Virus record (IMG/VR): IMGVR_UViG_3300042558_004148
Span: 124,001-188,000 of that record
Reading direction: 5' to 3' (one strand)
DNA: 64,000 nucleotides
Part shown: piece by piece, positions 12,137 to 38,003 of the stretch
How positions within the stretch are numbered: position 1 is the first letter of the stretch
Layout of the letters: each line of letters begins with the position of its first letter
Position numbers and translations under genes: made by a program
The notes under the pieces: model-generated
Databases searched by the model: none
Seen by the model: the letters and a program-made list of their open reading frames with translations, nothing else
What the model was told of the DNA's origin: nothing

Positions 12137-12529
12137 ATGGAAAGAGAAATTTTAATACAGGAGGAATATCTGGATTCACCATGGAAAATTATGGTTTGTT
12201 GCATATTATTGAATCAAACAAATAATAAACAGGTAAGACCGATTTTAAGCTCCGTATTTGATTTAATTCCAGATCCCATATCTACTATTGGATGTGATCC
12301 TTTGGATCTAGCAGCGGTCATAAAATGTACCGGATTTCAGAATATAAAGGCAAAGAGAATAATACAATTAAGTCAGAAATGGATATCTGGATTTACTGAC
12401 GTTAATGATTTACCTGGTATAGGTGTTTATGGTAGGGAATCCTGGGAAATATTCGTTAATAATAATATTTCAATAACACCAACCGATAAAAAATTAGCTA
12501 GATATATCAGTGATGTAACTGGATGCTAG
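12137..12529 (+). CDS. MBD4-like HhH-GPD DNA glycosylase (G:T/G:U mismatch)
   Basis: PWKIMVCCILLNQT, LPGIGVYGRESWEIF and PTDKKLARY align with the MBD4 glycosylase domain (PWKLLI..IFLNRT, LHGIGKYGNDSYRIF, PEDHKLNKY); no FeS cluster. Confidence 0.8.
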   Translation: MEREILIQEEYLDSPWKIMVCCILLNQTNNKQVRPILSSVFDLIPDPISTIGCDPLDLAAVIKCTGFQNIKAKRIIQLSQKWISGFTDVNDLPGIGVYGRESWEIFVNNNISITPTDKKLARYISDVTGC

Positions 12530-12831
12530 TTATTTTTTTTCGAACTTTTCTCGTTAAATGCCCCTTTGATATATTCAGCTACATCGGAGCCAGTTTTTTT
12601 ACCTTCCGATAGGAAATTATTAAATTCCTCTGATTTACCTTCGTTGTCTAGAAATTCATGGAAATACGAAGCTTCGTACATTGCATCCACCACTTCCGGT
12701 AAGGGTTGGTGTGCTGGTGTATAATTTCTGGAATTTACTCTTGGTGCATATTCGTTACCTGGAACATCAACGCTACCCGGAGCATCCAGCCATTCATTAA
12801 CACAATCTTTAAAGTTTTTGATATTTTTCAT
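12526..12831 (-). CDS. hypothetical protein with capsid-targeting-like N-terminus
   Basis: MKNIKNFKDCVNE; GATATATA on the minus strand at 12838-12845. Confidence 0.6.
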   Translation of the reverse strand: MKNIKNFKDCVNEWLDAPGSVDVPGNEYAPRVNSRNYTPAHQPLPEVVDAMYEASYFHEFLDNEGKSEEFNNFLSEGKKTGSDVAEYIKGAFNEKSSKKNN

Positions 12832-12906
12832 ATATTTTATATATCCGTACGGAACATAATTTTATTTCAGGATAAAACATTATAAAGAACCAGAAAAATA
12901 TAGTGA

Positions 12907-14307
12907 ATGATAATTGATATCGAAAACAAAGGATCATATTTAAAAGTCTCTCATTTCGGAGAAGAAGGCGAATTAGCATTTCTTAATGTACCAATAGCTG
13001 AAGATCAAAGATATAATTGGGAAAAGTGCGGTCCAAATGATCCCAAAAGGGATAAGGAATGGACTGATTGGACAGGTTTACCTGTAAGAAAAGCTAAGAC
13101 TGAAAGATACGATAAGTATCGAATGGCTCAGATATTAATAGAAGCACCCGAGGAATTAACTAAGCCATTATGGGAATTTCAAGAGCCTAAGAAATACTTT
13201 GTCGATATTGAGGTTGAGATAACTGAAGACATGGCAGCGGCATTGGATACAGAAAATGCTAGAAATCGTGTTTTATCAATAGGTATAGCTACCGATAAGA
13301 ATAAGATTATAGTTCTTGGATTAGATCCATTGACACCTGAACAACAAGCTAGCATATACAAGAAAACCAACGACTATTTTGCAAAAACTGGTGATACCTG
13401 GACTTTTAAATACAAACAGTTTGAAAGCGAGTATGACATGATGTACACATTCTTTAGAGAGCTTGGACCTAAAATGCCAGTTATAACTGGATGGAACTGG
13501 CTCGGATATGACTGGCCTTATTTAATGAACAGGGCAAAGAGACTTGGTATAGATCCAAAGATTATTTCACCTGGTAATTATTTAATAGGCAAAGCACAGT
13601 TACCTATGCACTTACTTATGTTTGACTACTTGGAAATCTACAAAAAATGGGATCGAGTAATCAAAATAAAGGAAAGTAATAGACTTGATTACGTTGCTGA
13701 AAAAGCAGCAGGATTTAAAAAGGTTGAATATAACGGAACACTTAGAGATTTATACCAATCCAATTTCGAAGACTTTATTTTCTATAACGCTGTCGATTGC
13801 GCACTTGTTCATTACATAGATCAGAAACTTAAAACAATGCAAACTTTCTTTAAGATTGCGATGATCTCGGGGGTGGAGATAAACAGATGTCTTTCACCAG
13901 TATGGTCAACGGAAGTTATGATGCTTAGAAAATTTCTTGATAGGAAACAGGTTTTTGTTGTTGAGAGAAAGGAAGAGGTTCATGTTAAGTTTGCTGGAGG
14001 ATACGTTAAGGAACCAATCAAGGGTCTGCATGAATGGATAGCATGCTACGATTTTGCTTCACTTTACCCTAATGCCATGGTTCAATGGGGGATTTCACCA
14101 GAAATATACAAGGGAAAAAATCTATCAAATCCCAGCGAGGATTGGGTGAAAACTGCATCCGGAGCATATTTTGGATCAGATGAAGAAAATCCAATTCTAA
14201 GAACGATCATTAAAGATCTATACTCCAGAAGGAGAAAAACAAAAGACAGAATGCTTGAGCTGGAGCTGGAAATAGACCAACTAAAAAAAGTTTTAGATAA
14301 AGAATAA
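12907..14307 (+). CDS. family-B DNA polymerase, N-terminal subunit (3'-5' exonuclease + motif A)
   Basis: ExoI VDIEVE, ExoII GWNWLGYDWPY, ExoIII YNAVD, GGYVKEP, motif A YDFASLYPN; ends in the fingers helix without motifs B or C. Confidence 0.9.
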   Translation: MIIDIENKGSYLKVSHFGEEGELAFLNVPIAEDQRYNWEKCGPNDPKRDKEWTDWTGLPVRKAKTERYDKYRMAQILIEAPEELTKPLWEFQEPKKYFVDIEVEITEDMAAALDTENARNRVLSIGIATDKNKIIVLGLDPLTPEQQASIYKKTNDYFAKTGDTWTFKYKQFESEYDMMYTFFRELGPKMPVITGWNWLGYDWPYLMNRAKRLGIDPKIISPGNYLIGKAQLPMHLLMFDYLEIYKKWDRVIKIKESNRLDYVAEKAAGFKKVEYNGTLRDLYQSNFEDFIFYNAVDCALVHYIDQKLKTMQTFFKIAMISGVEINRCLSPVWSTEVMMLRKFLDRKQVFVVERKEEVHVKFAGGYVKEPIKGLHEWIACYDFASLYPNAMVQWGISPEIYKGKNLSNPSEDWVKTASGAYFGSDEENPILRTIIKDLYSRRRKTKDRMLELELEIDQLKKVLDKE

Positions 14308-14405
14308 AAATTAACGAAGATTGGGTGAGGATAGGAAAAATCAGATGATATATAAAAACCTGGTGGAGCTAATCTAGACAATAAACCTAGTCAAAAATCA
14401 CAATT

Positions 14406-14885
14406 ATGGCAAATACAGACAATGAATGCAAAGATCTTCTCGTTGAGAATGACTACGTAAAGTCCACAAACCACCTGGATAAATTAATGACCCTTCAGAA
14501 GAGGACACAGGAGGGAGTTTATGGATACGATTTCAGTAACATGACTCTCGGTGAGATTAAAGATTTTTGGCTTTGGAATACCAGAGCTATTGATGATGAG
14601 GTCTCAGAAGCATACGATGCTTTAGGTGGTGTTTCTAATGATGGTGTAAATTCAATAGGAAATGCAGTTTGGAAACCTTGGAAAAGCAATCATAAGAAAG
14701 CTTATGAGATGAAAATCTCTGATCTTTCGGATGATGATCAAAAGGAGCTTAAGATGGAATTGGTTGACATCCAACATTTTATCTTTAATCTTATGATCTC
14801 AGTAGGCATGACAGCGGAGGAGCTTTACAATTACTACATTTCAAAAAACAAGGAGAATATCCGAAGACAAGAAAACAATTACTAA
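14406..14885 (+). CDS. T4 gp56-type dCTP/dUTP pyrophosphatase (dimeric all-alpha)
   Basis: NEC..L, IDDE..E...LG..S, AVWKPWK, ELVDI.HF..N....GM.AEE....Y..KNK.N..RQ.N.Y closely follow T4 gp56. Confidence 0.85.
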   Translation: MANTDNECKDLLVENDYVKSTNHLDKLMTLQKRTQEGVYGYDFSNMTLGEIKDFWLWNTRAIDDEVSEAYDALGGVSNDGVNSIGNAVWKPWKSNHKKAYEMKISDLSDDDQKELKMELVDIQHFIFNLMISVGMTAEELYNYYISKNKENIRRQENNY

Positions 14886-14894
14886 AAAGAAATA

Positions 14895-15878
14895 ATGGAA
14901 AATTTATACTCGTTACCTGAACCGATATTACAGGAAAATCCAAATAGATTCGTTCTATTCCCTATAGAACATCATGACATATGGAACATGTACAAACAAC
15001 AAGAAGCTTCCATATGGACTGCCGAAGAGATAGATTTAGCTCAGGATCTAAATGACTGGAGAAACAAGCTTACTGATGATGAAAGATATTTTGTTAAGAA
15101 TGTATTAGCTTTCTTTGCGGCATCCGATGGTATAGTTAATGAAAATTTGGCAGAGAATTTTGTTAGCGAGGTTCAATATACGGAGGCTAAATTTTTCTAC
15201 GGATTCCAGATAATGATGGAGAATATACATTCCGAAACATATTCGCTACTTATAGACACATACATTCAGGACAAGGACGAAAAAGACCATCTGTTCAAAG
15301 CTATCGATACAATTGATGCAGTTAAGAAAAAAGCTCAATGGGCTTTAAAATGGATAGATTCCCCACACTTTCAGGAAAGACTAGTAGCATTTGCTGCTGT
15401 TGAGGGTATATTTTTTAGCGGATCTTTCTGCTCTATCTTTTGGCTTAAGAAAAGAGGATTGATGCCTGGATTATCTTTCTCTAATGAACTTATATCTAGA
15501 GACGAAGGTTTACATTGCGATTTTGCTGTGATGTTACATAACAATCACCTAGCAAATAAGGTTTCTGAGGAAAGAATAAAAGAGATTATTACCAGTGCGC
15601 TAGAAATAGAAAAGGAATTCATTACTGAATCGTTGCCAGTTAGACTAATTGGTATGAATTCGGATTTAATGAAACAGTATCTTGAATTTGTTGCTGATAG
15701 ATTACTTGTTGAATTGGGATGCTCCAAGGTCTATAATTCTGAAAATCCATTTGACTTCATGGCAAACATTTCTTTGCAGGGTAAAACAAACTTTTTTGAG
15801 AAAAGAGTTGGAGAATATCAAAAATCTGGTGTTATGAATAAATCGGAGGATGCTTTTGGGTTTGATGCCGAATTTTAA
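14895..15878 (+). CDS. nrdB: class Ia ribonucleotide reductase beta subunit
   Basis: [47 protein letters not shown]. Confidence 0.97.
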
Positions 15879-15900
15879 AATTAAAAATAATAGATAATAA

Positions 15901-18390
15901 ATGCTTGTAATTAAGAGAGATGGTTCGAAGGAGCCGGTGAGATTTGAAAAAGTTTCAAATAGAATAAAAAAAATGACTTACGGGTTAAATCCTGATTATG
16001 TAGATGCAACAGAAATCGCTCAGAAGGTGATATCAGGTATCTATGATGGTATAACAACACAAGAGCTTGATAACCTAGCTGCTGAAACTGCAGCATCATT
16101 AATACCGAAACATCCGGACTATTCGATATTGGCTTCAAGAATTGCAGTATCTAGGCTACATAAGGTAACTAAAAAGAAATTTTCTGAGACCATACATGAT
16201 CTTTATAATTATATAGATCCTGAAACTAATGAGCCAGCTGGATTAATTAATGATGAAACGTATAATGCCGTAATTAAATACAAGCAGAAATTCGACGGCG
16301 CTATTATACACGAGAGAGATTTTGATTTTGAGTATTTCGGATTTAAAACTTTAGAAAAAAGTTATTTATTGAAGATGTATGGTCAGGTGGCTGAAAGTCC
16401 ACAACATATGTATATGAGAGTTGCAGTAGGAATATGGGGAGATGATATTAAGAACGCACTTAAAACTTATGAGCTGTTATCAAATCATATGATGACACAT
16501 GCAACACCTACATTATTTAATGCCGGAACAAAGAAACCACAACTATCATCTTGTTTCCTTCTTATGATGTCGGATGACTCCATACCTGGTATTTATAAAA
16601 CATTAACTGATGTTGCTATAATTTCTCAAAATGCAGGTGGTATCGGATTAGCAATACACAACGTTAGAAGTACGGGTTCTTATATCAAAGGAACTAATGG
16701 TACATCGAATGGTATTGTTCCGATGCTTAAGGTATTTAACGAAACCGCTAGATATGTTGATCAGGGTGGAGGAAAAAGAAAGGGGTCATTTGCTATGTAC
16801 ATGGAGCCATGGCATGCTGATATTGAGGATTTCTTGGATCTTAGAAAAAATACAGGTAAGGAAGAGATTAGAGCTAGAGATTTATTCCTTGCACTTTGGA
16901 CACCTGACCTATTTATGAAAAGAGTTGAAGAGGATGGACAATGGTCATTGTTTTCTCCATCTGATGTTCAAGGTCTTTGGGAATTATATGGTGATGAATT
17001 CGAGGATGCCTATGTTAAATATGAGACTTCGGGAAAAGCTAGAAAAGTAATGAAAGCTAGAGAGCTTTGGAGTAAAATTATCGATGCTCAAACTGAAACC
17101 GGTACACCATATATGATGTACAAGGATGCAGCTAATAAAAAATCAAATCAGAAAAATTTAGGTACGATTAAAAGTTCTAATCTTTGTACTGAGATTCTTG
17201 AATATACTGATAAGGACGAACAGGCTGTTTGTAATTTGGCTTCCATCCCCGTTAATAAATTTTTAAGATCAACAGATAACAGAACAGCCAAAATAGCTAG
17301 AGGTAAATGTGAAGTTGATCATAAAGCATTATATGATGTTGCTTATCAAACAACGATGAATCTTAATAAGGTTATAGATGTTAACTATTACCCGACACCG
17401 GAAACAAAAAGATCTAATATGAGACATAGACCGATAGGTATCGGTATTCAGGGTCTTGCTGATCTCTTTGCTATTGTTGGTATTCCTTTTACCTCACCTG
17501 AGGCTAAAAGAATTAACGAGGAAATATTTGAAACAATTTATTTTGCTTCGATGACAGCTTCCATGGATCTTGCTAAGAAAGATGGTAAGTACGAAACTTT
17601 CGATGGCTCTCCATTAAGTAAAGGTGAATTCCAATTTAACTTATGGGGCTTCAACGATTCGGATCTTTCAGGAAGATGGGATTGGACCAAGCTAAGAAAA
17701 GATGTTATGAAAAACGGGGCTAGGAATTCATTGTTATTAGCACCTATGCCAACAGCATCCACAGCACAAATTATGGGTAACAACGAGGCATTTGAACCAT
17801 TTACATCAAATATCTATACAAGAAGAACATTAAGCGGTGAATTTGTTATTATAAATAAACACCTAGTTAAAGATCTGATTGCTTTAGATCTTTGGGGAGA
17901 AGATATGAAGAATATGATCATTTTACATAAGGGATCGGTTCAGAATATAGCGCAAATCCCTGAATCTATAAGAGAAACATATAAAACTGTTTGGGAGATA
18001 AGACAGAAAGATCTTATTGATATGTCTGCTGACAGAGGTAAATTTATATGTCAATCCCAATCACTTAATTTATTTATAGAGAATGTTAATTCTGCTAAAT
18101 TAACTGCAGCTCATTTCCATTCATGGAAGATTGGACTTAAAACGGGGATGTATTATCTAAGAACAAAATCAGCTGTTGATGCAATTGCTGGATTGGGTGT
18201 AGATTTATCTAAGGCTAAGACCACAACAAGTAACGAAGCAGCATCACAACAGAGAGAAATAGCAAAAGAATCTATCTCAGCATCAATTGGTATGTCTAGT
18301 GAGGAATTAAGTAGGGCAGCGGAGGAAGCTACCGCAGGGATTACATGCAGCTTAGATAATCCTGAGGATTGTGAAATGTGTGGATCATAA
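15901..18390 (+). CDS. nrdA: class Ia ribonucleotide reductase alpha subunit with ATP cone
   Basis: VIKRDG ATP cone, [37 protein letters not shown]-terminal CEMC. Confidence 0.97.
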
Positions 18391-18405: not shown

Positions 18406-19035
18406 ATGGAATCTAAAATAAAAGCATTTAACGAATTTTTAAACGAAAGAGAACTTCCGGATAATCAGGGTAAAATCCTGGTTATTTTGGGAGCTCCCGG
18501 ATCAGGGAAGGGAACTCTATCAAAGGAACTAAATAAGGAATATGGTATACATCATATTTCAACCGGAGATCTTATTAGAAATTCAGACGATCCGGAATTA
18601 AAAAAAATAATATCAGGAGGCAACTTTATATCTGATGATATGATGGTAAAGATGCTAAGAGGTGAACTTAAAAAATTAGATCCTTCCAATGGAATTATTT
18701 TTGACGGATTTCCTAGAAATCTTAAGCAATCAAAAAAATTAGATTCAATCCTGGGAAAAATGGGGCTCGGTCTAAACCATGCCATATTTCTAGATCTGCC
18801 GGAGGATATCTCGAAGGAAAGAATTAGAGAAAGAGCTAAGAAGGAAAATAGAAAGGATGATGGTAGCGACGAGATAATAGATAAGAGATTCGAGGAATAT
18901 AATGATAAAACTTTACCTTTGTTGGACTTCTATAAGAAGAGCAGAAAATTAATTACAATAGATGCTAACACCGGGAGAGAAGGAGTCTTAAAATCAGTAG
19001 CTAAAAAACTAGGACTTAAAAAGCCAAAAAAATAA
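18406..19035 (+). CDS. adk: adenylate kinase (short LID) with capsid-targeting-like N-terminal extension
   Basis: GAPGSGKGT P-loop, HISTGDLIR, FDGFPR, R.DD; extension MESKIKAFNEFLNE. Confidence 0.9.
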   Translation: MESKIKAFNEFLNERELPDNQGKILVILGAPGSGKGTLSKELNKEYGIHHISTGDLIRNSDDPELKKIISGGNFISDDMMVKMLRGELKKLDPSNGIIFDGFPRNLKQSKKLDSILGKMGLGLNHAIFLDLPEDISKERIRERAKKENRKDDGSDEIIDKRFEEYNDKTLPLLDFYKKSRKLITIDANTGREGVLKSVAKKLGLKKPKK

Positions 19036-19711: not shown

Positions 19712-20986
19712 ATGACAAACAATAAGAATAAAAAGAAGCAATCTATGCCGATTAAGATGTCGGTTCCTATGAACATTCTACCCAAATCAAATCTGAAGCA
19801 AACAATATCATTATGTTTGGTTATGATTGTGAAAGACGAGGAAGACACCATGGAAAGGTGTTTGAAGGCTGTTGCACCTTATATAAAATATTGGGTAATA
19901 GTTGACACCGGATCAACTGACAAGACGAAGGAAGTTATTAAAACCACGATGGATTCGTTGGGTATTGAAGGGGAATTGCACGAGAGACCATGGGTAAACT
20001 TTGAGGTAAATAGAACTGAAAGTTTAAATTTGGCTAAAGATAAGTGTGACTATAGATGGATAATCGATGCGGATGATACTTTTTTTCCTGATACACCAGG
20101 AGTAAATCCATTTGCTGGATTGGACACACAAGCGGATTGCTATCAGCTTCTATATAAACTAAATGCTCTACAATATAACAGAGCACAGATAGTCAGATCA
20201 AACCAGAATTGGGTGTATCGAGGGGTTCTTCATGAGTATCTATTTCTTGATGAAGATAAGAAGGAAGTTCTGCAGTCTCCAATAAGAGGATGCCACGTTA
20301 TTGCTGATATTTCTCCACTTAAAAGAGCTGGTTCACTAGAGGAAAAATATTCAAATGATGCCAAGATATTGGAAGAAGCATTGATAAAAGAGCCGGGTAA
20401 CGAAAGATATATGTTTTATTTAGCACAGAGTTATAGAGATTCTGAACAGCTAGATAAAGCTATAGAAGCATATCAGAAGAGAATAGATATGGGTGGATGG
20501 GAAGAAGAGGTTTACTATTCCAAATATATGATAGCCAAGATAAGCGAGAAAAAGGGTAAACCAGATAACGAGCTTTCAGAATTATATTCCAAAGCATGGG
20601 AATATAGGCCATCCAGATTAGAGTGTGTTTTCCATACCATGAGAAAGCTTAGAGATCAGGGAAGACATCTTGTTGCATTTGCTTATGGTGATGTAGCTAT
20701 AAAAACTAAAGGAACATCGGATATTCTTTTTATTGAGCCTGAAATTTGGCAATGGAGACTTTTGGATGAATATTCACTGGCTGCTTATTATATAGGTAAC
20801 CCAGAAATTGCTATGGAAAAAACATCAGCTATTTTAAGTGCTCCTTTCTTTAAGGATATAGCACCAGCTGAACAAGCTAGGCTTAAGAAAAATATGGATT
20901 TCTATAAGAAAGGATCGGAGGAAAAATCCAAAAAGCTACAGATGATGCAACAGATGCAAAAAGCACAGGATAGCAGAAAGGTATAG
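19712..20986 (+). CDS. GT2-family glycosyltransferase with TPR repeats
   Basis: LCLVMIVKDEE, VDTGSTD, IIDADD (DxD), GVLHEY, then TPR-like FYLAQSY helices. Confidence 0.85.
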   Translation: MTNNKNKKKQSMPIKMSVPMNILPKSNLKQTISLCLVMIVKDEEDTMERCLKAVAPYIKYWVIVDTGSTDKTKEVIKTTMDSLGIEGELHERPWVNFEVNRTESLNLAKDKCDYRWIIDADDTFFPDTPGVNPFAGLDTQADCYQLLYKLNALQYNRAQIVRSNQNWVYRGVLHEYLFLDEDKKEVLQSPIRGCHVIADISPLKRAGSLEEKYSNDAKILEEALIKEPGNERYMFYLAQSYRDSEQLDKAIEAYQKRIDMGGWEEEVYYSKYMIAKISEKKGKPDNELSELYSKAWEYRPSRLECVFHTMRKLRDQGRHLVAFAYGDVAIKTKGTSDILFIEPEIWQWRLLDEYSLAAYYIGNPEIAMEKTSAILSAPFFKDIAPAEQARLKKNMDFYKKGSEEKSKKLQMMQQMQKAQDSRKV

Positions 20987-23459: not shown

Positions 23460-23460
23460 T

Positions 23461-24656: not shown

Positions 24657-25018
24657 TGTTTAAGGAGGAAGATAATAATCTAGAAAGTGGATATCCCATA
24701 GATAAACATCCACAGTATTCTATATTAAGAAAGCATATAGAAAGATCCGTACAAGATCTATTTTTAATTTCACTAAGAAATCAAAATAGTGATATTTTTT
24801 ATGTTTTCGAAAAAGAAGAACAGATAGATGCATTTCTTGAAAGAATGCTTAAGTATTGGGAAAAATACGAGAAGTACGAAACTTGCCAGGAAATAGTTAA
24901 GCTTGGGAAGAAGTTGAAGAAGAAGTGGAAAACCAGAGAATCAAATCCGGAAACAGCCGGCGAGATAAGAATAAAAGATATATTTAGATCAACATTTGAT
25001 GACGAAAGATTACTATAG
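24656..25018 (+). CDS. hypothetical protein with UVR-like motif
   Basis: [17 protein letters not shown] resembles the UvrB/UvrC (UVR) helix pair. Confidence 0.5.
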
Positions 25019-28621: not shown

Positions 28622-29770
28622 ATGAGTCCAGAAGAAAAAATAGAGATTAAGAAAAAGATAGAGAGACTTACCTCACTTAAGAATGAACTTAAGAATGAGG
28701 AGCAGGCTATCAAGTTAACCATGAACTCCATCTATGGAGCGATTGGTAATAACTGGTTTATTTGCTTCAATACTGACGTTGCCGAATCAGTAACTCTGCA
28801 GGGACAGGACTTAATTAAGTATTCTGAAAAGATACTCGACAAGTATTTTCATGAACATTGGCATCTAGATACAGAATTACACGAGAGATTAGGTATTACT
28901 AAGGTAAAGAAAGTTGTAAAACCCTTGGTTGTATATGGTGACACTGATTCGAATTATGTGACCTTTCAGGAGGTTGTAGATTCCTGTGATTACCAGGGGG
29001 AGGACAAGGATCTTATTATTAAAATCAATGAATATAGATTAAATGAGTATCTTAGAAAGTGCTTTGATATTTACTCCAAAAAATGGAACACCACGAACTA
29101 TCAGGATTTTGAGTTAGAAACTCTTTCATATAACGGTATATTTTTGGGTAAGAAAAAATATGTAGTGAACCTAGCATATGATTCTGGACTTCATATGGAT
29201 CCACTTCAACAACTCAAGTTCACTGGGGTTGAAATGATTAAAGGCGGTACCCCTCCATTCGTTAGAGAAAAATTAATATATCTAACTAAATTTATATTCT
29301 CCAAAGGTAGGTCATTTGACATAAGAGAATTTGTTAAGGAGCTTAAAACCATCAAGAAGGAATTTAAAACTCAGGAGCCCAAGAATATATCGGCATCAGT
29401 TAATATAAACAATTATGAAAAGTTTATATTAAATGATACTACCGGATTCGAGGTTTCGAAGGGATGCCCGATTCACGTAAGAGCTTCAGGATATCATAAT
29501 TATTTACTAAATGCATCAAAATACAAAAGTAAATATTCACTCATAAGAAGCTCTGAAAAAATAAATTACTATTTTGTTAAAGTTAAATCAATATCGGAGA
29601 ATAACGTTTTTGCTTACCCGCAGGGAACTTATCCATACGAATTTGCTCCACCTATTGATTATGATGAGCAATTTACAAAGACCATACTCGATCCGATAAA
29701 CAGATTCATAGAGGTCATGGGATATAATAGGATAAGTCCAAATTTATTCATGATAAACGCACTATTTTAA
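28622..29770 (+). CDS. family-B DNA polymerase, C-terminal subunit (motifs B, C and thumb)
   Basis: KLTMNSIYG, VTLQGQ, YGDTDS, KKKY, GVE, PIHVRAS; C-terminal INALF resembles the T4 gp43 clamp peptide. Confidence 0.92.
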   Translation: MSPEEKIEIKKKIERLTSLKNELKNEEQAIKLTMNSIYGAIGNNWFICFNTDVAESVTLQGQDLIKYSEKILDKYFHEHWHLDTELHERLGITKVKKVVKPLVVYGDTDSNYVTFQEVVDSCDYQGEDKDLIIKINEYRLNEYLRKCFDIYSKKWNTTNYQDFELETLSYNGIFLGKKKYVVNLAYDSGLHMDPLQQLKFTGVEMIKGGTPPFVREKLIYLTKFIFSKGRSFDIREFVKELKTIKKEFKTQEPKNISASVNINNYEKFILNDTTGFEVSKGCPIHVRASGYHNYLLNASKYKSKYSLIRSSEKINYYFVKVKSISENNVFAYPQGTYPYEFAPPIDYDEQFTKTILDPINRFIEVMGYNRISPNLFMINALF

Positions 29771-30241: not shown

Positions 30242-30305
30242 GAAAGTCCAATTATAGATCTAATTGATCTTGATATATAGATGGTAAAATAATTAATATT
30301 AATTG

Positions 30306-31766
30306 ATGTTATTAAATAAGAAGGTATTAAATTTCGTTTCTTTCTTGAATGAATCAAAGACTGACGGAATAAAGGTTATAGTTCTTACTGGGAATGTAAA
30401 GGGTAGTAAAACATCTGAATCATTCAAGGAAGAATGTGAAAAAATGGGAGCTGAATGTCACGTTGTTGATGTGAACGAAGCTGTATTGGAAGCCGTGTAT
30501 AACGGACATCTTATAAAGATGGACGGAGAACAGATTCTGATAGATCCAAATTCGACTGTGATTGTTCCGCGAAGAGGTGTATTGGAAAATTCACACACTA
30601 AGCAAATATTGCTATCTTTGGAGGAAGCAAGGTATTTTACAGTAAATAGCTTGGAATCGATGGAGGTTTGCGAAAATAAATTCATTACATCGAAGATAAT
30701 GGAAGAGCATGGATTACCTGTTCCTAAATATGCTCTAGTACCCAACGAGGATGCACTTGATAGAGCACTTGAAGAGATTGGTGGTAAATTCCCGGTTATA
30801 ATGAAATTATTATCAGGAACACAAGGAATCGGAGTTTCTATAGTTGATTCCTATGCATCTTTAAAATCTGTATATCAAACAATCAGAAAACTTGATGATA
30901 CAAATGAGATATTGATACAGGAGAAAATTGATTCAAAATCTGATTTAAGAATTCAGGTAATAACCAAAAAAATAGATCCACTAAATCCAACTAAAGACAA
31001 TTGTATTATACTGGGATCTATGAAAAGGGATGCTGTTGATAAGGACTTTAGAACTAATTACTCTTTAGGTGGAAGCGTTTCTAAATACGAAATAGACGAT
31101 GAACTAGTAGATATCGCATGCAGAGCAGCTAATGCAGTAGGATGTCATTGGTGTGGAGTTGATATTATGATTGATAGTAAGACTAAAAAGCCTTACATTC
31201 TGGAAGTTAATTCATCCCCCGGTACTGAGGGTATATCTAAAGCTATAGGTAAACCGATTGTGGAGGATGTTCTTGATTATATACTAAACAAAGACAACTG
31301 GTCACAATCTGACCTTGAAATAGGATATCTCGAAACATTAACAGTTCCTGGAATTGGTAGAATGGTTGCTAAGTTTGATACTGGTAACGGTGCTAGATCT
31401 TGCACATTACATGCAGACGAAGTAGAAGAGCTGGATGGAAAATTAGTTTGGCAGGTTGGTAAGAAAAAATTTGTCAATGAAATAATTGAATATTCGGATG
31501 CTGAAGTTGGTAGGGACGTACACACAAGACCAGTTATAGAAATTGATTTAGTTTTTAATAATGTAACTGTACCTAAAGTAAAGGTATCTCCCGTTGATAG
31601 AACAGAGAAGAGCACACCGTTTTTAGCAAATAGAGCATTTATGAGAAAACTTGGATTAGTAGTTAATCCAGATAAAGCTTTCGTAGTAAGTGGTGAGCTA
31701 GAAGATAAATATAGTGCAGGATCATCTAAGGGTGAAGCCCATGCAGGAATAGAATTTGAAAAATAA
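30306..31766 (+). CDS. RimK-family ATP-grasp ligase fused to a RimB-like retropepsin protease
   Basis: ENKF, FPVIMK..GTQGIGV, IQE.I, DFRTNYSLGG, GVDIM, LEVNSSPG; C-terminal AKFDTGN...S..LHA...RPVI...DR....PFL.NR; N-terminus KVLNFVSFLNES; GATATATA at 30272. Confidence 0.88.
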   Translation: MLLNKKVLNFVSFLNESKTDGIKVIVLTGNVKGSKTSESFKEECEKMGAECHVVDVNEAVLEAVYNGHLIKMDGEQILIDPNSTVIVPRRGVLENSHTKQILLSLEEARYFTVNSLESMEVCENKFITSKIMEEHGLPVPKYALVPNEDALDRALEEIGGKFPVIMKLLSGTQGIGVSIVDSYASLKSVYQTIRKLDDTNEILIQEKIDSKSDLRIQVITKKIDPLNPTKDNCIILGSMKRDAVDKDFRTNYSLGGSVSKYEIDDELVDIACRAANAVGCHWCGVDIMIDSKTKKPYILEVNSSPGTEGISKAIGKPIVEDVLDYILNKDNWSQSDLEIGYLETLTVPGIGRMVAKFDTGNGARSCTLHADEVEELDGKLVWQVGKKKFVNEIIEYSDAEVGRDVHTRPVIEIDLVFNNVTVPKVKVSPVDRTEKSTPFLANRAFMRKLGLVVNPDKAFVVSGELEDKYSAGSSKGEAHAGIEFEK

Positions 31767-32753: not shown

Positions 32754-33674
32754 ATGAATAAAATTGAGGCAGTGTATGTGGATTGGCATGCACCCAGAAA
32801 ATTCAGAGGAGCATCTTCACCGGTTAAAAAACCATGGGAGATTGCATTAATAATTAGAAGTACATATTTTGCTAGGGAAGCAAATTCCTGGTCTCCTGTT
32901 TTATATTGTGACGAAATAACATATGCGTATTACGATAAGATAGGACTTCTTGACCACTTCGATAAAGTTTATCCGATATTACCTCTTACTGATATAGGTT
33001 TCGATCCGAATATATTTTGGGCTGGTGCTAAATTTATAGCAATGAAAAATTGCGATTCGCCGTTTGTAATGATGGATTTGGATGCAGAAATTCGTTTTGA
33101 AGTAGATCTTTCCGCTTATGATGCATTTTTCACACATTATGAGGGTATTATTCCCGGAGATATTAAATTTTATCCGGATCCTGAATATCTTGATACTGAT
33201 GGATTTTTTAAAGAAAGATATTCTTTTGAATGGGGTGAAAAAGCTTTCAATACATGTATTTTCCATATTAAGGATCTTATATTAGCAAAGGAATACGCAA
33301 ATGCAGCTCTAGATTTTATGTATGGTGTTAGCTCAGTTAATCCAGCATTTGAAAAAGTACCGTATATACTTTTAGCTGAACAGAGATTCGTGTATGAATT
33401 CTGTAAAATAAAGAATTTGAAAGTCGGTACTCTAATAAAAGGAGAGTATATACCAACCAACTATATGCACGGAGTTGATTCCTTCATTAATTCAGATTTA
33501 GCTGAGATTGGCGAGAAAGGATTTTTGCATGTTTGGGGATATAAAAGCAATCTAAATGGTAACGATGAGGAAGCGGAAAGCTTTTTTGGTAATCTTATTT
33601 CGACAGCACCTCAACTAAGTAAGCATATAGTTAATTCGGTTTCTCTAAATACTGAATTAACTTTGGATAAATAG
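32754..33674 (+). CDS. putative GT-A fold sugar transferase (DUF6734-like)
   Basis: LYCD, FWAGAK, PFVMMDLD (DxD), FNTCI, LAEQ, HVWG. Confidence 0.5.
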   Translation: MNKIEAVYVDWHAPRKFRGASSPVKKPWEIALIIRSTYFAREANSWSPVLYCDEITYAYYDKIGLLDHFDKVYPILPLTDIGFDPNIFWAGAKFIAMKNCDSPFVMMDLDAEIRFEVDLSAYDAFFTHYEGIIPGDIKFYPDPEYLDTDGFFKERYSFEWGEKAFNTCIFHIKDLILAKEYANAALDFMYGVSSVNPAFEKVPYILLAEQRFVYEFCKIKNLKVGTLIKGEYIPTNYMHGVDSFINSDLAEIGEKGFLHVWGYKSNLNGNDEEAESFFGNLISTAPQLSKHIVNSVSLNTELTLDK

Positions 33675-34272: not shown

Positions 34273-35115
34273 ATGGCAAGAAAGGAACATAAATACCACT
34301 ACATCTACAAAATAACTTGCACCAGAACCAAAAGATATTATATTGGAATGCACTCAACCGATAAACTAAATGATGGTTATATGGGCGGAGGAAAAAGAAT
34401 AAGAAATTCGATAAGAAGACATGGCAAGGAAGCACACACTAAGGAGATTTTGGAATATTTCAATGACAGGGAATCATTAAGAAACAGAGAGATTGTATTA
34501 GTTAATGAAGATCTATTGAATGATCCGATGTGTATGAATTTACAACCAGGAGGTGGAGGAGGAATAATAAACGAAAAACATCTGAAGGATTTTTGCCAGG
34601 CTGGAAATAAAGCATTCGTCGAGAAATTAAAGGATGATGTCTATATGAATAGATTCATCGAGTGTACAAAAGAGGGAAGAAAAAAGGCAGTTGCTAAAGC
34701 CAAAGAACTCTATGAAAATGGTACATACAGACTGGACACTTTTAAAGACCGAACGCATACACCCGAAACGATTTTAAAAATGAAGGAAGCAAAGAAATTT
34801 CATGGATCCGGTGATAAAAATTCCCAGTTTGGAAAAAAATGGATAAAAAATTCAGAAACTATGGAATGCATAAAGATAGATGCATCCGAATATGAAAATT
34901 ATATAGTTCTGGGATGGGAAAGCGGGAGATTCCCAAGTTCAGCTGGATTAACTGTTAAATTAACAGAATCCCAGATTAGCGAAATAAAAACTATGCTATC
35001 CGATAATATTATGGTATCTGAAATAGCTAAGAATTTCCAAACATCGGTAACAACGATCAGAAAAATAAAACGTGGAGATACTTGGAGACATGTTAATATA
35101 GAAGGGCTGGAATAA
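34273..35115 (+). CDS. free-standing GIY-YIG homing endonuclease (Seg-like, NUMOD3 + HTH)
   Basis: YIYKIT...YYIGMH, YMGGG, F..RTHTPETILKM NUMOD3-like, C-terminal HTH. Confidence 0.85.
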   Translation: MARKEHKYHYIYKITCTRTKRYYIGMHSTDKLNDGYMGGGKRIRNSIRRHGKEAHTKEILEYFNDRESLRNREIVLVNEDLLNDPMCMNLQPGGGGGIINEKHLKDFCQAGNKAFVEKLKDDVYMNRFIECTKEGRKKAVAKAKELYENGTYRLDTFKDRTHTPETILKMKEAKKFHGSGDKNSQFGKKWIKNSETMECIKIDASEYENYIVLGWESGRFPSSAGLTVKLTESQISEIKTMLSDNIMVSEIAKNFQTSVTTIRKIKRGDTWRHVNIEGLE

Positions 35116-35146: not shown

Positions 35147-35195
35147 ATTGAAACTTTATTTTATAAAGATATATAATTTTAAAATAAATTTATAC

Positions 35196-35543: not shown

Positions 35544-35561
35544 TATAAATATACAGCATTC

Positions 35562-35594
35562 AAATCCCAATCTTCTCAGATTGGGATTTTTTTT
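35562..35594 (+). terminator. intrinsic terminator
   Basis: AAATCCCAATCT/AGATTGGGATTT plus T-run. Confidence 0.75.
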
Positions 35595-35601
35595 GATTTT
35601 A

Positions 35602-35633
35602 TTTTTTTGTCCCGTAATTTTTACTTAACTTTG
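35602..35633 (+). promoter_or_regulatory. Bacteroidota-type early promoter
   Basis: TTTTTTGTCCCG-N11-TAACTTTG. Confidence 0.65.
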
Positions 35634-35653
35634 TATAAATTAAAAAAAAAGAT

Positions 35654-36106: not shown

Positions 36107-36122
36107 AAATAAAAAGCAGTGA

Positions 36123-36500
36123 ATGAGAATAGCGGTAATAGCACACGATAACAAGAAGGCAGATATGGTTGCATTCGTAATGAAGCGACTGGATTTCTTT
36201 TCAAAAATTGAAATTGTAGCAACTGGAACTACAGGAACACACATAGAACATGCGGGTTTAGATGTAGATCTAAAAAAATCAGGACCTCAAGGAGGTGATG
36301 CACAAATTGCAGCTGAACTTGTGGAGGGAAAGATCGATATGATATTATTTTTCATAGATCCATTAACATCCCATGCACATGAAGTTGACGTACAAATGTT
36401 ATTAAGATTGTGTAATGTGTATAATATACCGATTGCTACAAACTACTCCACTGCTGATCTTCTAATAAGATCAATCAAAAATAACAAATCGCAGGAATGA
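36123..36500 (+). CDS. mgsA: methylglyoxal synthase
   Basis: IAVIAHDNKK, ATGTTG, SGPQGGDAQI, DPL...HEVDV..LLR.C.V.NIPIATN. Confidence 0.93.
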   Translation: MRIAVIAHDNKKADMVAFVMKRLDFFSKIEIVATGTTGTHIEHAGLDVDLKKSGPQGGDAQIAAELVEGKIDMILFFIDPLTSHAHEVDVQMLLRLCNVYNIPIATNYSTADLLIRSIKNNKSQE

Positions 36501-37153
36501 GAATAATTTTTATATCAGATACACACACCCAACATCATGAGCTCGATTCACACTTGGACTCATTATATTTGGAGGACAATAACAGCATACTAGTACACTG
36601 TGGTGATATCTCATCAAGAGGTAGAGGATATGAAGTTGAGGATTTTTTTATCTGGTATGATTCATTACCTTTTAAAAATAAGATAATGATCGCGGGTAAC
36701 CATGATTTTCTTTTTGAGAAAAATCCAGATGCAGCCAAAAATCTACTGGATGAATACGGAAAATCAATAATTTACTTGGAGGACAGTGGTGTAGAAATAG
36801 AAGGCGTTAAATTCTGGGGAAGCCCAGTAACCCCTTGGTTTTATGACTGGGCATTTAATAGAAGAGAGGATATACAGAATCATTGGGATCTTATACCTGA
36901 AGACACAAACGTTCTAATAACTCATGGCCCACCATTCGGTATTCTCGATGTTACATATAGGGAGAGAATGCATGTTGGCTGCCCATTATTGAGAAGCAAA
37001 ATAGAAACTCTGAAAGACCTTAAAATTAGCGCTTTTGGGCATATACACGAGGCTTTCGGTACTGATAATATAAATGATGTTCATTATGTTAATGCGAGCT
37101 TTGTAACGCTTAGATATGACCCGTTAAACCATCCCATCGTAATAGATTTATAA
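36497..37153 (+). CDS. calcineurin-like metallophosphoesterase
   Basis: SDTH, HCGD, AGNHD, THGPP, FGHIHE. Confidence 0.9.
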   Translation: MRIIFISDTHTQHHELDSHLDSLYLEDNNSILVHCGDISSRGRGYEVEDFFIWYDSLPFKNKIMIAGNHDFLFEKNPDAAKNLLDEYGKSIIYLEDSGVEIEGVKFWGSPVTPWFYDWAFNRREDIQNHWDLIPEDTNVLITHGPPFGILDVTYRERMHVGCPLLRSKIETLKDLKISAFGHIHEAFGTDNINDVHYVNASFVTLRYDPLNHPIVIDL

Positions 37154-37223
37154 AAATTACATTTTTTTTATTTGTTTATGAAATATAATCAACCAAATGT
37201 GATAGAATTAATAAACCAAATAA

Positions 37224-38003
37224 ATGAAGACTTTTTATAAACCCTCGGTAGCAATCAAATGGACTAAGGACCGATTGAAAGATTATGGCTACACAGTAAA
37301 AACAGAGAAATGGCAAGGTATAGATTCGCCAGATGATATGTGGGAGGTGATGAATCACTCTTTCCAATTTTTTATACCTCATACTCTGGAAGAACTTGTA
37401 AGCGAGGTTAAACCGAATCTTCCCTGGGCAGATGACCATTTCAGGGAAAGAGTAGGTGGTCTTCCGTTAAATCCTCCACCCTCTCATGAATGGTGGCCCT
37501 TTTCTCAGAAGAATAATGAACAGTTCGGCGGAAACACACAATTTTCTCATACGTATCCTGAAAGAATATGGCCGAAAAATTCTGGGCCAGACGGGGATTC
37601 AGTACATTTGGAGGGTATCAGATTTAAGTATGGCGATCTTGGTGACGTTGTTAATCTATTGGAAAAAGAACCTTATACTAGACAAGCATTCTTACCGATT
37701 TGGTTCCCTGAAGATACCGGAACCGTACATGGGGAAAGGGTACCATGCACCATAGGATATCAATTTATGAGGAGAGGGGATCATTTCCATATGGTTTATT
37801 ATATAAGATCCTGTGATTATATTAGGCATTTTAGAGACGACGTTTATATGGCTTGCAGAAAGCTTATGTGGATTCTTGATATATTGAAGGAAAGAAATCC
37901 TGATCTGTGGGGAAATGTTACACCCGGATATTTCGCCATGCACATAACTTCCCTGCATTGTTTTAATAGCGAGAAGACAGTTTTAAAAATGAATAATAAA
38001 TAA
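37224..38003 (+). CDS. divergent thymidylate-synthase-family enzyme with dCMP-type Asp (putative cytosine nucleotide modifier)
   Basis: TYPER, TRQA, catalytic VPC, RSCDYIRHFRDD (Asp where ThyA has Asn), SLHCF. Confidence 0.75.
   Translation: MKTFYKPSVAIKWTKDRLKDYGYTVKTEKWQGIDSPDDMWEVMNHSFQFFIPHTLEELVSEVKPNLPWADDHFRERVGGLPLNPPPSHEWWPFSQKNNEQFGGNTQFSHTYPERIWPKNSGPDGDSVHLEGIRFKYGDLGDVVNLLEKEPYTRQAFLPIWFPEDTGTVHGERVPCTIGYQFMRRGDHFHMVYYIRSCDYIRHFRDDVYMACRKLMWILDILKERNPDLWGNVTPGYFAMHITSLHCFNSEKTVLKMNNK

What the first reader, a model, noticed from the sequence alone, without database searches (positions are those of the whole stretch)
12137..38003. Dispersed cytosine-modification system with an MBD4-like repair glycosylase
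Seen: besides canonical ThyA (RSVDTFLGLPFN) there is a second TS-fold enzyme with RSCDYIRHFRDD, a T4 gp56-like dCTPase/dUTPase beside the polymerase, an MBD4-like glycosylase directly upstream of the polymerase, and two sugar-transferase-like genes (19712, 32754). Known: Asn177 (E. coli ThyA) versus Asp179 (T4 gp42) sets dUMP versus dCMP specificity; gp56 removes dCTP so modified C is incorporated; MBD4 excises T, U and 5hmU opposite G, the deamination products of 5mC, C and 5hmC. Inference: the genome contains a C5-modified cytosine and the phage supplies its own deamination repair. The unusual RH in place of xG and H-x-F in place of H-x-Y suggest chemistry or substrate different from T4. Caveats: gp56 homologs also occur in phages with unmodified C, and the genes are not clustered.
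Basis: partly seen in the sequence, partly recalled or inferred. Interest (0 to 1): 0.75.

Follow-up and report, generated by a model that had tools for sequence, protein, structure and literature searches.

The report
Phage cytosine-replacement genes with MBD4-like repair
A large uncultured phage carries the enzymes expected for replacing cytosine in its DNA with a C5-modified cytosine, made by an uncharacterised branch of the thymidylate-synthase family, plus a small MBD4-like glycosylase that in cultured phages is found only where such an enzyme is present, probably to repair deaminated modified cytosines.

Summary
The divergent TS-fold gene is at 37224-38003 and carries RSCDYIRHFRDD. The T4 gp56 homolog is at 14406-14885, 41% identical to gp56. 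The 130-aa MBD4-like glycosylase is at 12137-12529, with TM 0.9 to MBD4 and the catalytic Asp conserved. Two GT-A glycosyltransferases lie at 19712 and 32754. Canonical ThyA is at 48790-50010, outside the given range.

The TS-like protein keeps the catalytic Cys, Arg166, Asp169 and Tyr94. It has an invariant Asp at the Asn177 position, which indicates a cytosine nucleotide as substrate. It also has family-wide changes: Glu58 to Asn, Leu143 to Arg, Gly173 to His.

This clade occurs in more than 100 cultured phages, including Muddy, Serbin and Zuko. There it sits in a module of NTP-pyrophosphatase, TS-like, dCMP deaminase and polymerase.

The MBD4-like gene is rare: 15 phage records. Every cultured lineage that has it also has an Asp177 TS homolog. 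These include the XP12 group, whose DNA has 5mC in place of C.

The three genes co-occur in related jumbo-phage contigs. The modification itself is unproven, its chemistry is unknown, and nothing links the glycosyltransferases to DNA. I rate this a new variant of a known kind.

The parts
37224..38003 (+). Divergent thymidylate-synthase-fold enzyme (259 aa), the predicted (d)CMP C5-modifying enzyme. Cys175 is the catalytic Cys. Arg195, Ser196 and Asp198 correspond to R166, S167 and D169. Asp206 sits at the Asn177 position, Arg172 at the Leu143 position, His202 at the Gly173 position and Asn65 at the Glu58 position.
   Evidence: The motif is confirmed. Pfam PF00303 scores only E 3e-4, below the cut-off. 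The AF2 model has pLDDT 93.6. Foldseek top hits are MilA CMP hydroxymethylase (TM 0.69-0.74), HY126 dCMP hydroxylase, TS and T4 dCH. hhalign against classical TS homologs gives 97.7% probability.
14406..14885 (+). T4 gp56-like all-alpha NTP pyrophosphohydrolase (159 aa), a candidate dCTPase/dUTPase.
   Evidence: It is 41% identical to T4 gp56, E 5e-28. It matches phrog_173 at 1e-18. It hits 1444 phage records, the best of them Straboviridae gp56 'dCTP pyrophosphatase'.
12137..12529 (+). MBD4-like HhH-GPD DNA glycosylase (130 aa, catalytic domain only). Asp117 corresponds to human MBD4 Asp560 and Lys119 to Lys562.
   Evidence: It matches PDB MBD4 domains at E 1e-14. The AF2 model has pLDDT 94.9, and the 16 best PDB matches are all MBD4 at TM 0.88-0.90. 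The catalytic Asp is invariant in homologs.
18406..19035 (+). Nucleoside-monophosphate kinase of the adenylate / UMP-CMP kinase family (209 aa). It is a candidate kinase for the modified dCMP. This role is inferred only.
   Evidence: PF00406 ADK scores 6e-37. TIGR01359 UMP-CMP kinase family scores 5e-33, below the cut-off. The gene lies directly after the ribonucleotide reductase genes.
48790..50010 (+). Canonical ThyA (406 aa, with insertions), Asn at position 177. It supplies dTMP, so the TS-like enzyme is not needed for thymidylate.
   Evidence: The motif RSVDTFLGLPFN is confirmed. PF00303 scores 283.6 bits.
12907..14307 (+). N-terminal half of a split family-B DNA polymerase (exonuclease plus start of the polymerase domain). 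This is the polymerase that would have to accept the modified dCTP.
   Evidence: Pfam PF03104 and PF00136 positions 16-152.
28622..29770 (+). C-terminal half of the split family-B DNA polymerase.
   Evidence: Pfam PF00136 positions 132-451.
19712..20986 (+). GT2 glycosyltransferase with TPR repeats (424 aa). Membership in the system is doubtful.
   Evidence: PF00535 scores 1e-8 with TPR. It matches phrog_13126. Atlas clusters of phage GT2/SunS-like proteins match. There is no evidence of a DNA substrate.
32754..33674 (+). DUF6734 protein with a GT-A (GT8-like) fold (306 aa). Membership in the system is doubtful.
   Evidence: PF20508 scores 5.6e-5, below the cut-off. Atlas feature and structure matches are to DUF6734 and nucleotide-diphospho-sugar transferases. 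It is syntenic in close relatives only.

Best explanation
The phage replaces deoxycytidine in its DNA, wholly or largely, by a C5-substituted deoxycytidine made at the nucleotide level.

Proposed steps:
1. The gp56 homolog hydrolyses dCTP (and dUTP) to the monophosphate. This keeps dCTP out of the pool and feeds dCMP.
2. The divergent TS-fold enzyme attacks C6 of (d)CMP with Cys175 and installs a substituent at C5. Asp206 at the Asn177 position selects cytosine.
3. A phage NMP kinase (candidate: ORF 18406) and host NDP kinase raise the product to the triphosphate.
4. The split family-B polymerase incorporates it.
5. Thymidylate comes separately, from the canonical ThyA and a dCMP deaminase encoded elsewhere in the genome.
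6. The MBD4-like glycosylase removes T or 5-substituted U opposite G. These arise when the modified cytosine is deaminated, either spontaneously or by the phage's own deaminase acting on single-stranded DNA. Base-excision repair then restores the modified C:G pair.

Shown: the folds, the conserved residues, the homologies and the co-occurrence. Inferred: every enzymatic activity, the identity of the substituent (methyl or hydroxymethyl are the default guesses), and the presence of the modified base in virions. The two glycosyltransferases are not part of the supported model.
For: TS-like enzyme:
- It has a full TS fold: pLDDT 93.6, with the best PDB matches being cytosine-nucleotide enzymes (MilA, HY126 dCMP hydroxylase) and TS.
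- The catalytic Cys, Arg166, Ser167, Asp169, Tyr94 and His207 equivalents are kept. Asp at the Asn177 position is invariant in 59 diverse homologs.
- Asn177 to Asp is the established dUMP-to-dCMP switch (PMC13326640; PMC8670742).
- A canonical ThyA is also present, so this enzyme is not needed for dTMP.

gp56 homolog: 41% identical to T4 gp56.

Gene neighbourhood of more distant homologs (47-55% identical):
- They lie immediately beside a dCMP deaminase, with a gp56-type or XP12-type NTP pyrophosphatase upstream and a DNA polymerase downstream.
- That arrangement is reported as enriched in metavirome contigs with modified cytosine (bioRxiv 10.1101/2024.12.05.627091).

MBD4-like glycosylase:
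- TM 0.9 to MBD4 with the catalytic Asp and Lys conserved.
- Only 15 of 50,697 phage records carry it.
- Each lineage checked also has an Asp177 TS homolog: the XP12 group (XP12 and Donnerlittchen checked) and cyanophage S-TIM54.
- In XP12 and Donnerlittchen it heads the operon of pyrophosphatase, TS, deaminase and DHFR.

Co-occurrence in IMG/VR:
- 16 of 31 contigs with the glycosylase also carry the TS-like gene.
- Five of these contigs checked here are rated complete, and all five have both genes.
- gp56-like, glycosylase and TS-like occur together in G007, G008 and G009.

Other:
- Phage dCMP-deaminase homologs deaminate 5mC and 5hmC in ssDNA in vitro, which gives a source of G:T and G:hmU lesions.
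- Inteins and LAGLIDADG insertions in TS-like homologs mark it as a conserved, needed enzyme.
Against: - No chemical evidence for a modified base exists for this phage, or for any phage with this TS-like clade, in the literature I could search.
- The enzyme lacks Glu58 (Asn) and Arg127 (Gln), and has no counterpart of the DRTG loop that holds Arg21 in classical TS. Tyr209 is Phe. So nucleotide and folate binding may differ from all characterised family members.
- The gp56 homolog could be just the dUTPase. No trimeric dUTPase is present here or in 5 complete relatives.
- The genes are dispersed over 25 kb, so operon evidence is lacking in this genome.
- One complete relative (G006) has TS-like and gp56-like but no glycosylase. 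The glycosylase is therefore dispensable.
- Weak palindrome avoidance is compatible with protected DNA but is not specific.
Confidence: 0.6

Rival explanations
1. The genes are unrelated housekeeping functions. The gp56 homolog is the phage's dUTPase. The MBD4-like enzyme is a general G:U/G:T repair glycosylase. The TS-like protein has some other role. Virion DNA carries ordinary cytosine.
For: The genes are dispersed. There is no trimeric dUTPase in the genome or in 5 complete relatives, so a dUTPase role for the gp56 homolog is plausible. The phage carries other repair genes such as UvdE. One complete relative lacks the glycosylase.
Against: The invariant Asp at the Asn177 position alongside a canonical ThyA argues for a distinct cytosine substrate. 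The MBD4-like gene is restricted to phage lineages with Asp177 TS homologs, three independent lineages with three different TS clades. TS-like homologs elsewhere sit in the pyrophosphatase, TS, deaminase, polymerase module.
Confidence: 0.15
2. The TS-like enzyme methylates dCMP only as a route to thymidylate: dCMP to 5-methyl-dCMP or dCTP, then deaminase, then dTMP or dTTP, as proposed for part of the XP12 pool. Little or no modified cytosine ends up in DNA.
For: TS-like homologs in small phages lie directly beside a dCMP deaminase. XP12-type deaminases convert 5mdCTP to dTTP. This genome also encodes a dCMP deaminase.
Against: This phage has its own canonical ThyA, so a second thymidylate route is redundant. 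A dCTPase homolog and a T:G-type glycosylase make more sense if modified C is in DNA. In XP12 the same route coexists with full 5mC replacement.
Confidence: 0.1
3. The TS-like enzyme acts on a ribonucleotide or another small molecule, in the manner of MilA (CMP hydroxymethylase of mildiomycin biosynthesis), and not on a DNA precursor.
For: The best sequence-profile and structure matches are to MilA. Two of the phosphate-binding arginines (R21, R127) and the Tyr209 hydroxyl that binds the 3'-OH are lost.
Against: The gene is phage-borne. In many phages it is embedded between an NTP pyrophosphatase, a dCMP deaminase, a thymidylate-kinase-like gene and the DNA polymerase. No antibiotic-type biosynthetic genes are nearby. 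MilA itself also binds dCMP (PDB 5jp9).
Confidence: 0.1

Closest known systems
T4 cytosine-replacement pathway (gp56 dCTPase, gp42 dCMP hydroxymethylase, gp1 kinase, glucosyltransferases)
   Same: There is a true gp56 homolog (41% identity). The TS-fold enzyme has the catalytic Cys, Asp at the Asn177 position and Thr at the His147 position, as in gp42. A separate canonical TS and a dCMP deaminase are present.
   Different: The TS-like protein is only about 13-15% identical to gp42. It has Asn instead of the catalytic Glu60 and Arg instead of the acidic residue at the Leu143 position. It has His at the Gly173 position. No gp1-family kinase or GT-B DNA glucosyltransferase was identified. The genes are dispersed.
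Xanthomonas phage XP12 group (5-methylcytosine genomes; dCMP methylase TS homolog, 5mdCTP deaminase)
   Same: It has an Asp177 TS homolog and shares the MBD4-like glycosylase (30-33% identical, with the same catalytic Asp and Lys). Homologs of the TS-like gene in small phages have the same order: pyrophosphatase, TS, deaminase.
   Different: The TS clade is different: XP12 keeps Glu58, the DRTG loop and the LG/Y motifs. In XP12 the genes form one operon with DHFR, whereas here they are scattered. The pyrophosphatase here is gp56-type, not XP12-type.
Eukaryotic MBD4 glycosylase domain (T, U and 5hmU opposite G)
   Same: The fold matches at TM 0.88-0.90 and rmsd 1.4-2.0 A, with 28-30% identity. 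The HhH GIG hairpin is present, as are the catalytic Asp560 and Lys562 equivalents. There is no iron-sulfur cluster domain.
   Different: There is no methyl-CpG-binding domain; the protein is the 130-aa catalytic core only. The Arg468 wedge residue is Gln (Leu in XP12 and S-TIM54).
5-hydroxy-dCMP synthases of RB69, DLP3 and HY126 (flavin-dependent TS homologs, PMC13326640)
   Same: It is a TS-fold, Asp177, phage-encoded enzyme acting before replication. This family is the precedent that small active-site signatures in TS homologs can mean new chemistry.
   Different: The diagnostic D169N change is absent here (Asp198 is retained).
MilA CMP 5-hydroxymethylase (mildiomycin pathway)
   Same: It is the best structural and profile match, and has Asp at the Asn177 position.
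   Different: MilA is a bacterial antibiotic-pathway enzyme with 13-15% identity. The context here is phage DNA-precursor metabolism.

Membership tests
Thymidylate synthase superfamily (ThyA fold) | TS alpha/beta fold | tested here: met
   The AF2 model has pLDDT 93.6. More than 390 PDB matches at E<=0.001 were found, and all 50 listed are TS-family chains. hhalign probability is 97.7%.
Thymidylate synthase superfamily (ThyA fold) | Catalytic Cys146, with Arg166, Ser167, Asp169 and Tyr94 | tested here: met
   The equivalents are Cys175, Arg195, Ser196, Asp198 and Tyr111. All are invariant or at least 90% conserved in 59 homologs.
Canonical ThyA (dUMP to dTMP) | Asn177, Glu58, His147, and the DRTG loop with Arg21 | tested here: not met
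   Asp206, Asn65 and Thr176 occupy these positions, and there is no DRTG loop. Pfam PF00303 scores below its gathering score.
T4 gp42-type dCMP hydroxymethylase | Asp at the Asn177 position | tested here: met
   Asp206 is invariant.
T4 gp42-type dCMP hydroxymethylase | Catalytic Glu60, and an acidic residue at the Leu143 position | tested here: not met
   Asn65 and the invariant Arg172 occupy these positions. The criteria come from PMC13326640.
5-hydroxy-dCMP synthase | Asn at the Asp169 position (D169N) | tested here: not met
   Asp198 is retained in at least 90% of the family. The criterion comes from PMC13326640.
T4 gp56 dCTPase/dUTPase | Sequence homology over the catalytic all-alpha core | tested here: met
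   41% identity over 113 aa, E 5e-28. phmmer gives 2.5e-28.
T4 gp56 dCTPase/dUTPase | Hydrolysis of dCTP, not only dUTP | not testable with these tools
   This needs an enzyme assay.
MBD4 glycosylase domain | HhH-GPD fold of the MBD4 type without an Fe-S cluster | tested here: met
   TM 0.88-0.90. The 16 best PDB matches are all MBD4. Sequence E-value is 1e-14.
MBD4 glycosylase domain | Catalytic Asp560 and Lys562 | tested here: met
   The equivalents are Asp117 and Lys119 in the PTDKKL motif. Asp is invariant in 31 homologs and is also present in XP12 and S-TIM54.
MBD4 glycosylase domain | Arg468 intercalating wedge | tested here: not met
   Gln27 occupies this position and is invariant in the jumbo-phage group. 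XP12 and S-TIM54 have Leu.
MBD4 glycosylase domain | Excision of T, U and 5hmU opposite G | not testable with these tools
   This needs a glycosylase assay.
Phage DNA glycosyltransferases | Homology to T4 AGT/BGT or JGT-like GT-A DNA transferases, or linkage to the TS gene across unrelated phages | tested here: inconclusive
   Both ORFs have GT-A folds. Synteny with TS-like is seen only in close relatives. No comparison with known DNA glycosyltransferases was run.
Cytosine-replaced phage genome | Modified deoxycytidine in virion DNA | not testable with these tools
   This needs LC-MS or long-read signal data.

The most novel reading that the evidence does not exclude
The TS-like clade is defined by Asn at the Glu58 position, an invariant Arg at the Leu143 position, His at the Gly173 position and Asp at the Asn177 position. 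It may catalyse a C5 chemistry on dCMP that is neither methylation, hydroxymethylation nor hydroxylation. That would yield an undescribed cytosine derivative present in this jumbo-phage group and in more than 100 cultured phages, including the therapeutic mycobacteriophage Muddy. In the same reading, the MBD4-like protein is the first phage-encoded mismatch glycosylase dedicated to maintaining a modified-cytosine genome.
Probability: 0.25. Interest if true: 0.85.

Novelty: new variant of a known kind. Interest (0 to 1): 0.62.

Why it matters
Nucleotide-level cytosine replacement is a major phage counter-defence. It also blocks or biases sequencing, cloning and CRISPR tools.

This TS-like clade scores below Pfam's threshold, so it would be missed by screens that rely on PF00303. 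It is labelled plain 'thymidylate synthase' in more than 100 cultured phages, among them Muddy, which is used therapeutically. If it makes a modified dCMP, those genomes are modified without anyone having looked. The 2026 finding that D169N homologs are flavin hydroxylases shows that such active-site signatures can hide new chemistry.

I found no report of the link between an MBD4-like glycosylase and Asp177 TS homologs in three unrelated phage lineages. It points to a simple principle: a genome made of easily deaminated modified cytosines needs its own G:T or G:hmU repair. That matters all the more when the phage also carries a deaminase that acts on single-stranded DNA. All of this can be tested directly with cultured phages and standard assays.

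Tried and rejected
- Near-identical DNA search of the phage collection found nothing.
- I considered that the TS-like enzyme belongs to the 5-hydroxymethyl-dU (thymidine hypermodification) pathways, because of its neighbours (thymidylate kinase, dUTPase_2, deaminase, PolA). I rejected this because Asp, not Asn, is invariant at position 177. The relevant papers do not mention these phages either.
- I considered the 5-hydroxy-dCMP synthase reading and rejected it, because D169N is absent.
- At first sight the catalytic Asp of MBD4 seemed replaced by Glu ('GND' against 'GRE'). Counting residues back from the C-terminus of human MBD4, written from memory, places Asp560 in 'PEDHKL'. That motif aligns with 'PTDKKL', so the Asp is conserved.
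- The partner 'hypothetical protein' found upstream of TS-like in Serbin, Strzyga and Zuko has no homolog in this genome and no Pfam match.
- No C5 DNA methyltransferase (PF00145) is present in the genome, so post-replicative methylation is unlikely.
- The palindrome and restriction-site analysis gave only weak, non-specific signals.
- Literature searches found nothing on a phage MBD4-like glycosylase, on DUF6734, or on DNA modification in Muddy, Gordonia or Serratia phages with this gene.
I rebuilt the alignment without them.
- I did not use sequencing-run tools, since short reads cannot show the modification.

Full report
**Setting.** The window is part of a single 217,893-base virus record with 34.6% G+C, rated 79% complete. 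IMG/VR holds contigs of 343-373 kb with identical genes, one of them with terminal repeats. The polymerase is most similar to those of uncultured huge phages, Lak phages, Chryseobacterium phage MA9V and Sphingomonas phage PAU. This is a jumbo phage.

**Gene map of the flagged range**:

| Coordinates | Product |
|---|---|
| 12137-12529 | HhH-GPD glycosylase |
| 12907-14307 | N-terminal half of a family-B DNA polymerase |
| 14406-14885 | all-alpha NTP pyrophosphatase |
| 14895-18390 | ribonucleotide reductase, small and large subunits |
| 18406-19035 | adenylate / UMP-CMP-type kinase |
| 19712-20986 | GT2 glycosyltransferase with TPR |
| 21678-23459 and 26410-27804 | topoisomerase II subunits |
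| 23506-24420 | UvdE |
| 24996-26018 | DnaJ |
| 28622-29770 | C-terminal half of the polymerase |
| 30303-31766 | RimK-like ATP-grasp protein |
| 32754-33674 | DUF6734 protein |
| 34273-35115 | GIY-YIG/HTH endonuclease-like ORF |
| 36123-36500 | methylglyoxal synthase |
| 36497-37153 | metallophosphoesterase |
| 37224-38003 | divergent TS-fold protein |

**Checking the observation.** Both peptide motifs are present exactly as written. The canonical ThyA lies at 48790-50010, outside the stated range. One correction: the 'polymerase' next to the glycosylase and the gp56 homolog is only half of a split gene.

**The TS-like enzyme.**
- Pfam recognises it only below threshold, E 3e-4.
- A model built on 59 diverse homologs is confident (pLDDT 93.6) and is a full TS fold. 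The best PDB matches are MilA CMP hydroxymethylase (TM 0.69-0.74), the phage HY126 dCMP hydroxylase, thymidylate synthases and T4 dCMP hydroxymethylase.
- A family profile also finds MilA first, at 4e-9.
- I aligned it with the window's own ThyA, T4 gp42 and the XP12 dCMP methylase, first by MAFFT and then profile against profile. Both give the same residue map.

Residues kept:
- catalytic Cys146: Cys175
- Arg166, Ser167, Asp169: Arg195, Ser196, Asp198
- Tyr94: Tyr111
- His207: His245

Residues changed, in the whole family:

| Position in classical TS | Residue here | Note |
|---|---|---|
| Asn177 | Asp206 | invariant |
| His147 | Thr | as in gp42 |
| Leu143 | Arg172 | invariant |
| Gly173 | His202 | |
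| Glu58 | Asn65 | |
| Arg127 | Gln154 | |
| Tyr209 | Phe | |
| DRTG loop with Arg21 | absent | |

Asn177 to Asp is the established switch from dUMP to dCMP (PMC13326640; PMC8670742). The D169N signature of 5-hydroxy-dCMP synthases is absent. So is the acidic residue at position 143 that marks hydroxymethylases.

The substrate base is therefore very probably cytosine. The product cannot be read from known signatures. Loss of Glu58 and gain of Arg and His close to C5 leave room for unfamiliar chemistry.

**Distribution of the TS-like clade.**
- It is abundant in metagenomes: 4234 clusters in the word-based search and 677 representatives at 50% identity.
- In the cultured-phage collection it occurs in 121 records at about 40-46% identity. 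These include 72 Gordonia phages, mycobacteriophages Muddy and FF47, the Serratia phage Serbin group, Streptomyces phage Zuko, Brevundimonas phages and Pseudomonas phages. Almost all are annotated 'thymidylate synthase'.
- In these small phages the gene order is thymidylate-kinase-like gene, NTP pyrophosphatase, a hypothetical gene, TS-like, dCMP deaminase, DNA polymerase.
- The same adjacency to a deaminase and a pyrophosphatase appears in distant IMG/VR homologs.
- The pyrophosphatase is either gp56-type or XP12-type.
- A preprint reports that exactly this arrangement (PRA-PH/MazG-type pyrophosphatase, Asp177 TS, dCMP deaminase, PolA) is enriched in metavirome contigs with modified cytosine. 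It also reports that such TS homologs make 5mdCMP in five of seven tested cases (10.1101/2024.12.05.627091). Whether any tested enzyme belongs to the present clade I could not determine.
- Some homologs carry an intein at the catalytic cysteine, or LAGLIDADG insertions. That is typical of conserved, needed enzymes.

**The gp56 homolog.** It is 41% identical to T4 gp56 over the catalytic core, E 5e-28. Its best matches among 1444 phage records are Straboviridae gp56 proteins, including phages with 5hmC and 5-hydroxycytosine derivatives. Neither this genome nor five complete relatives has a trimeric dUTPase. A plain dUTPase role would therefore be enough to explain its presence.

**The glycosylase.**
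- The 130-aa protein matches only the catalytic domain of MBD4, at E 1e-14.
- Its model has pLDDT 94.9 and superposes on MBD4 at TM 0.88-0.90 and rmsd 1.4-2.0 A. The 16 best PDB matches are all MBD4, followed by the archaeal thymine glycosylase Mig.
- I placed human Asp560 in the motif PEDHKL by counting back from the C-terminus of human MBD4, which I wrote from memory, so this numbering rests on my own knowledge. That motif aligns with PTDKKL here.
- The Asp and the following Lys are conserved in all phage homologs. The Arg468 wedge is Gln.

**The key comparative result.**
- In 50,697 phage records the gene is found in only 15. These are the XP12 group (Xanthomonas and Stenotrophomonas phages, and Janthinobacterium phage Donnerlittchen), cyanophage S-TIM54 and one weak fragment.
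- XP12 DNA has 5-methylcytosine in place of cytosine.
- In XP12 and Donnerlittchen the glycosylase gene heads the operon of pyrophosphatase, TS homolog, dCMP deaminase and DHFR. Their TS homologs have Asp at position 177.
- S-TIM54 also has an Asp177 TS homolog, RSNDMATGVPLD.
- With the jumbo-phage group, that makes three unrelated lineages with three different TS clades. In each, the MBD4-like gene accompanies an Asp177 enzyme.
- I found no paper that notes this.

**Co-occurrence among relatives.**
- Of 31 IMG/VR contigs with the glycosylase, 16 also carry the TS-like gene. The rest are short or incomplete.
- Five glycosylase-bearing contigs checked here are rated complete (G001, G007, G008, G011 and the 250-kb contig of L020/L063). 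All five have TS-like.
- Of five large TS-like contigs tested, four have the gp56 homolog and three have the glycosylase. The order glycosylase, polymerase N-half, gp56-like is the same in those three.
- One complete relative has TS-like and gp56-like but no glycosylase. The glycosylase is an accessory to the pathway, not a requirement.

**Mechanism proposed.**
1. dCTP is hydrolysed by the gp56 homolog.
2. dCMP is modified at C5 by the TS-like enzyme.
3. The product is phosphorylated. The kinase at 18406, of the family that includes UMP-CMP kinases, is the candidate.
4. The product is incorporated by the split polymerase.
5. ThyA and a dCMP deaminase, encoded about 97 kb away, make thymidylate.
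6. Deamination of 5-substituted cytosine gives T or a 5-substituted U opposite G. Host uracil glycosylase cannot correct these back to the modified base pair. An MBD4-type enzyme removes exactly these bases.
7. Phage dCMP-deaminase homologs deaminate 5mC and 5hmC in single-stranded DNA in vitro. A phage that carries such a deaminase may therefore damage its own replicating genome, which would explain why the glycosylase sits in the deaminase operon in XP12.

These steps are inference from homology and gene association. No activity has been measured.

**What is not supported.** The two glycosyltransferases are GT-A fold proteins of families common in phages. They are syntenic with TS-like only in close relatives. 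I found nothing that ties them to DNA. No C5 DNA methyltransferase is present. Restriction-site palindromes are barely avoided, apart from CGCG and CATG. That fits protected DNA but is not specific.

**Verdict.**
A nucleotide-level cytosine modification with dedicated mismatch repair is the best reading, at about 0.6.
- The chemistry is open, and the sugar step is unsupported.
- The pathway logic is known from T4 and XP12.
- Two things are new: this TS-like clade is uncharacterised, and I found no earlier report of the association of an MBD4-like glycosylase with Asp177 TS homologs.

Noticed in passing
window 12907-14307 and 28622-29770: The family-B DNA polymerase is split into two genes 14.3 kb apart. 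The first holds the exonuclease and the start of the polymerase domain, and the second holds the rest. Ribonucleotide reductase, a kinase, a glycosyltransferase, topoisomerase II, UvdE and DnaJ lie between them.
   Followed up: partly
window 36123-36500: A phage-encoded methylglyoxal synthase lies two genes upstream of the TS-like gene. It scores 168.8 bits against the NCBIfam equivalog NF003559, whose cut-off is 84. It is conserved at that place in relatives.
   Followed up: partly
window 48790-50010: The canonical ThyA is 406 aa, with two large insertions relative to ordinary ThyA. A similar 418-aa form is present in a related contig (G003).
   Followed up: no
window 34273-35115: An ORF resembling a GIY-YIG plus HTH_7 homing endonuclease is present in some close relatives and absent from others at the same position. 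It is probably a mobile element.
   Followed up: partly
proteins P0121, P0167, P0201, P0227 (homologs of window 37224-38003): Some homologs of the TS-like enzyme are interrupted by an intein at the catalytic cysteine region, or by LAGLIDADG endonuclease insertions.
   Followed up: partly
phage records NC_022054 (Muddy), NC_021063 (FF47), HQ403646 (GTE2), MK608336 (Serbin), MN204493 (Zuko): The same Asp177 TS-like clade, 40-46% identical, is annotated as ordinary thymidylate synthase in more than 100 cultured phages. These include the therapeutic mycobacteriophage Muddy. I found no report on the state of their DNA.
   Followed up: partly
L005:8914-9396 (XP12), L134:6914-7384 (Donnerlittchen), L006:3995-4381 (S-TIM54): XP12-group phages and cyanophage S-TIM54 encode the MBD4-like glycosylase, labelled hypothetical or endonuclease III. 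In XP12 and Donnerlittchen it is the first gene of the operon of pyrophosphatase, TS, deaminase and DHFR.
   Followed up: yes
whole genome G000: The record is rated 79% complete at 218 kb, while IMG/VR contigs with identical genes reach 343-373 kb. CGCG (observed/expected 0.35) and CATG (0.70) are the only clearly avoided 4-base palindromes. The CpG odds ratio is 0.71.
   Followed up: partly
window 23506-24420, 24996-26018, 30303-31766: The phage encodes a UV-damage endonuclease UvdE, a full-length DnaJ chaperone and a RimK-like ATP-grasp ligase.
   Followed up: no
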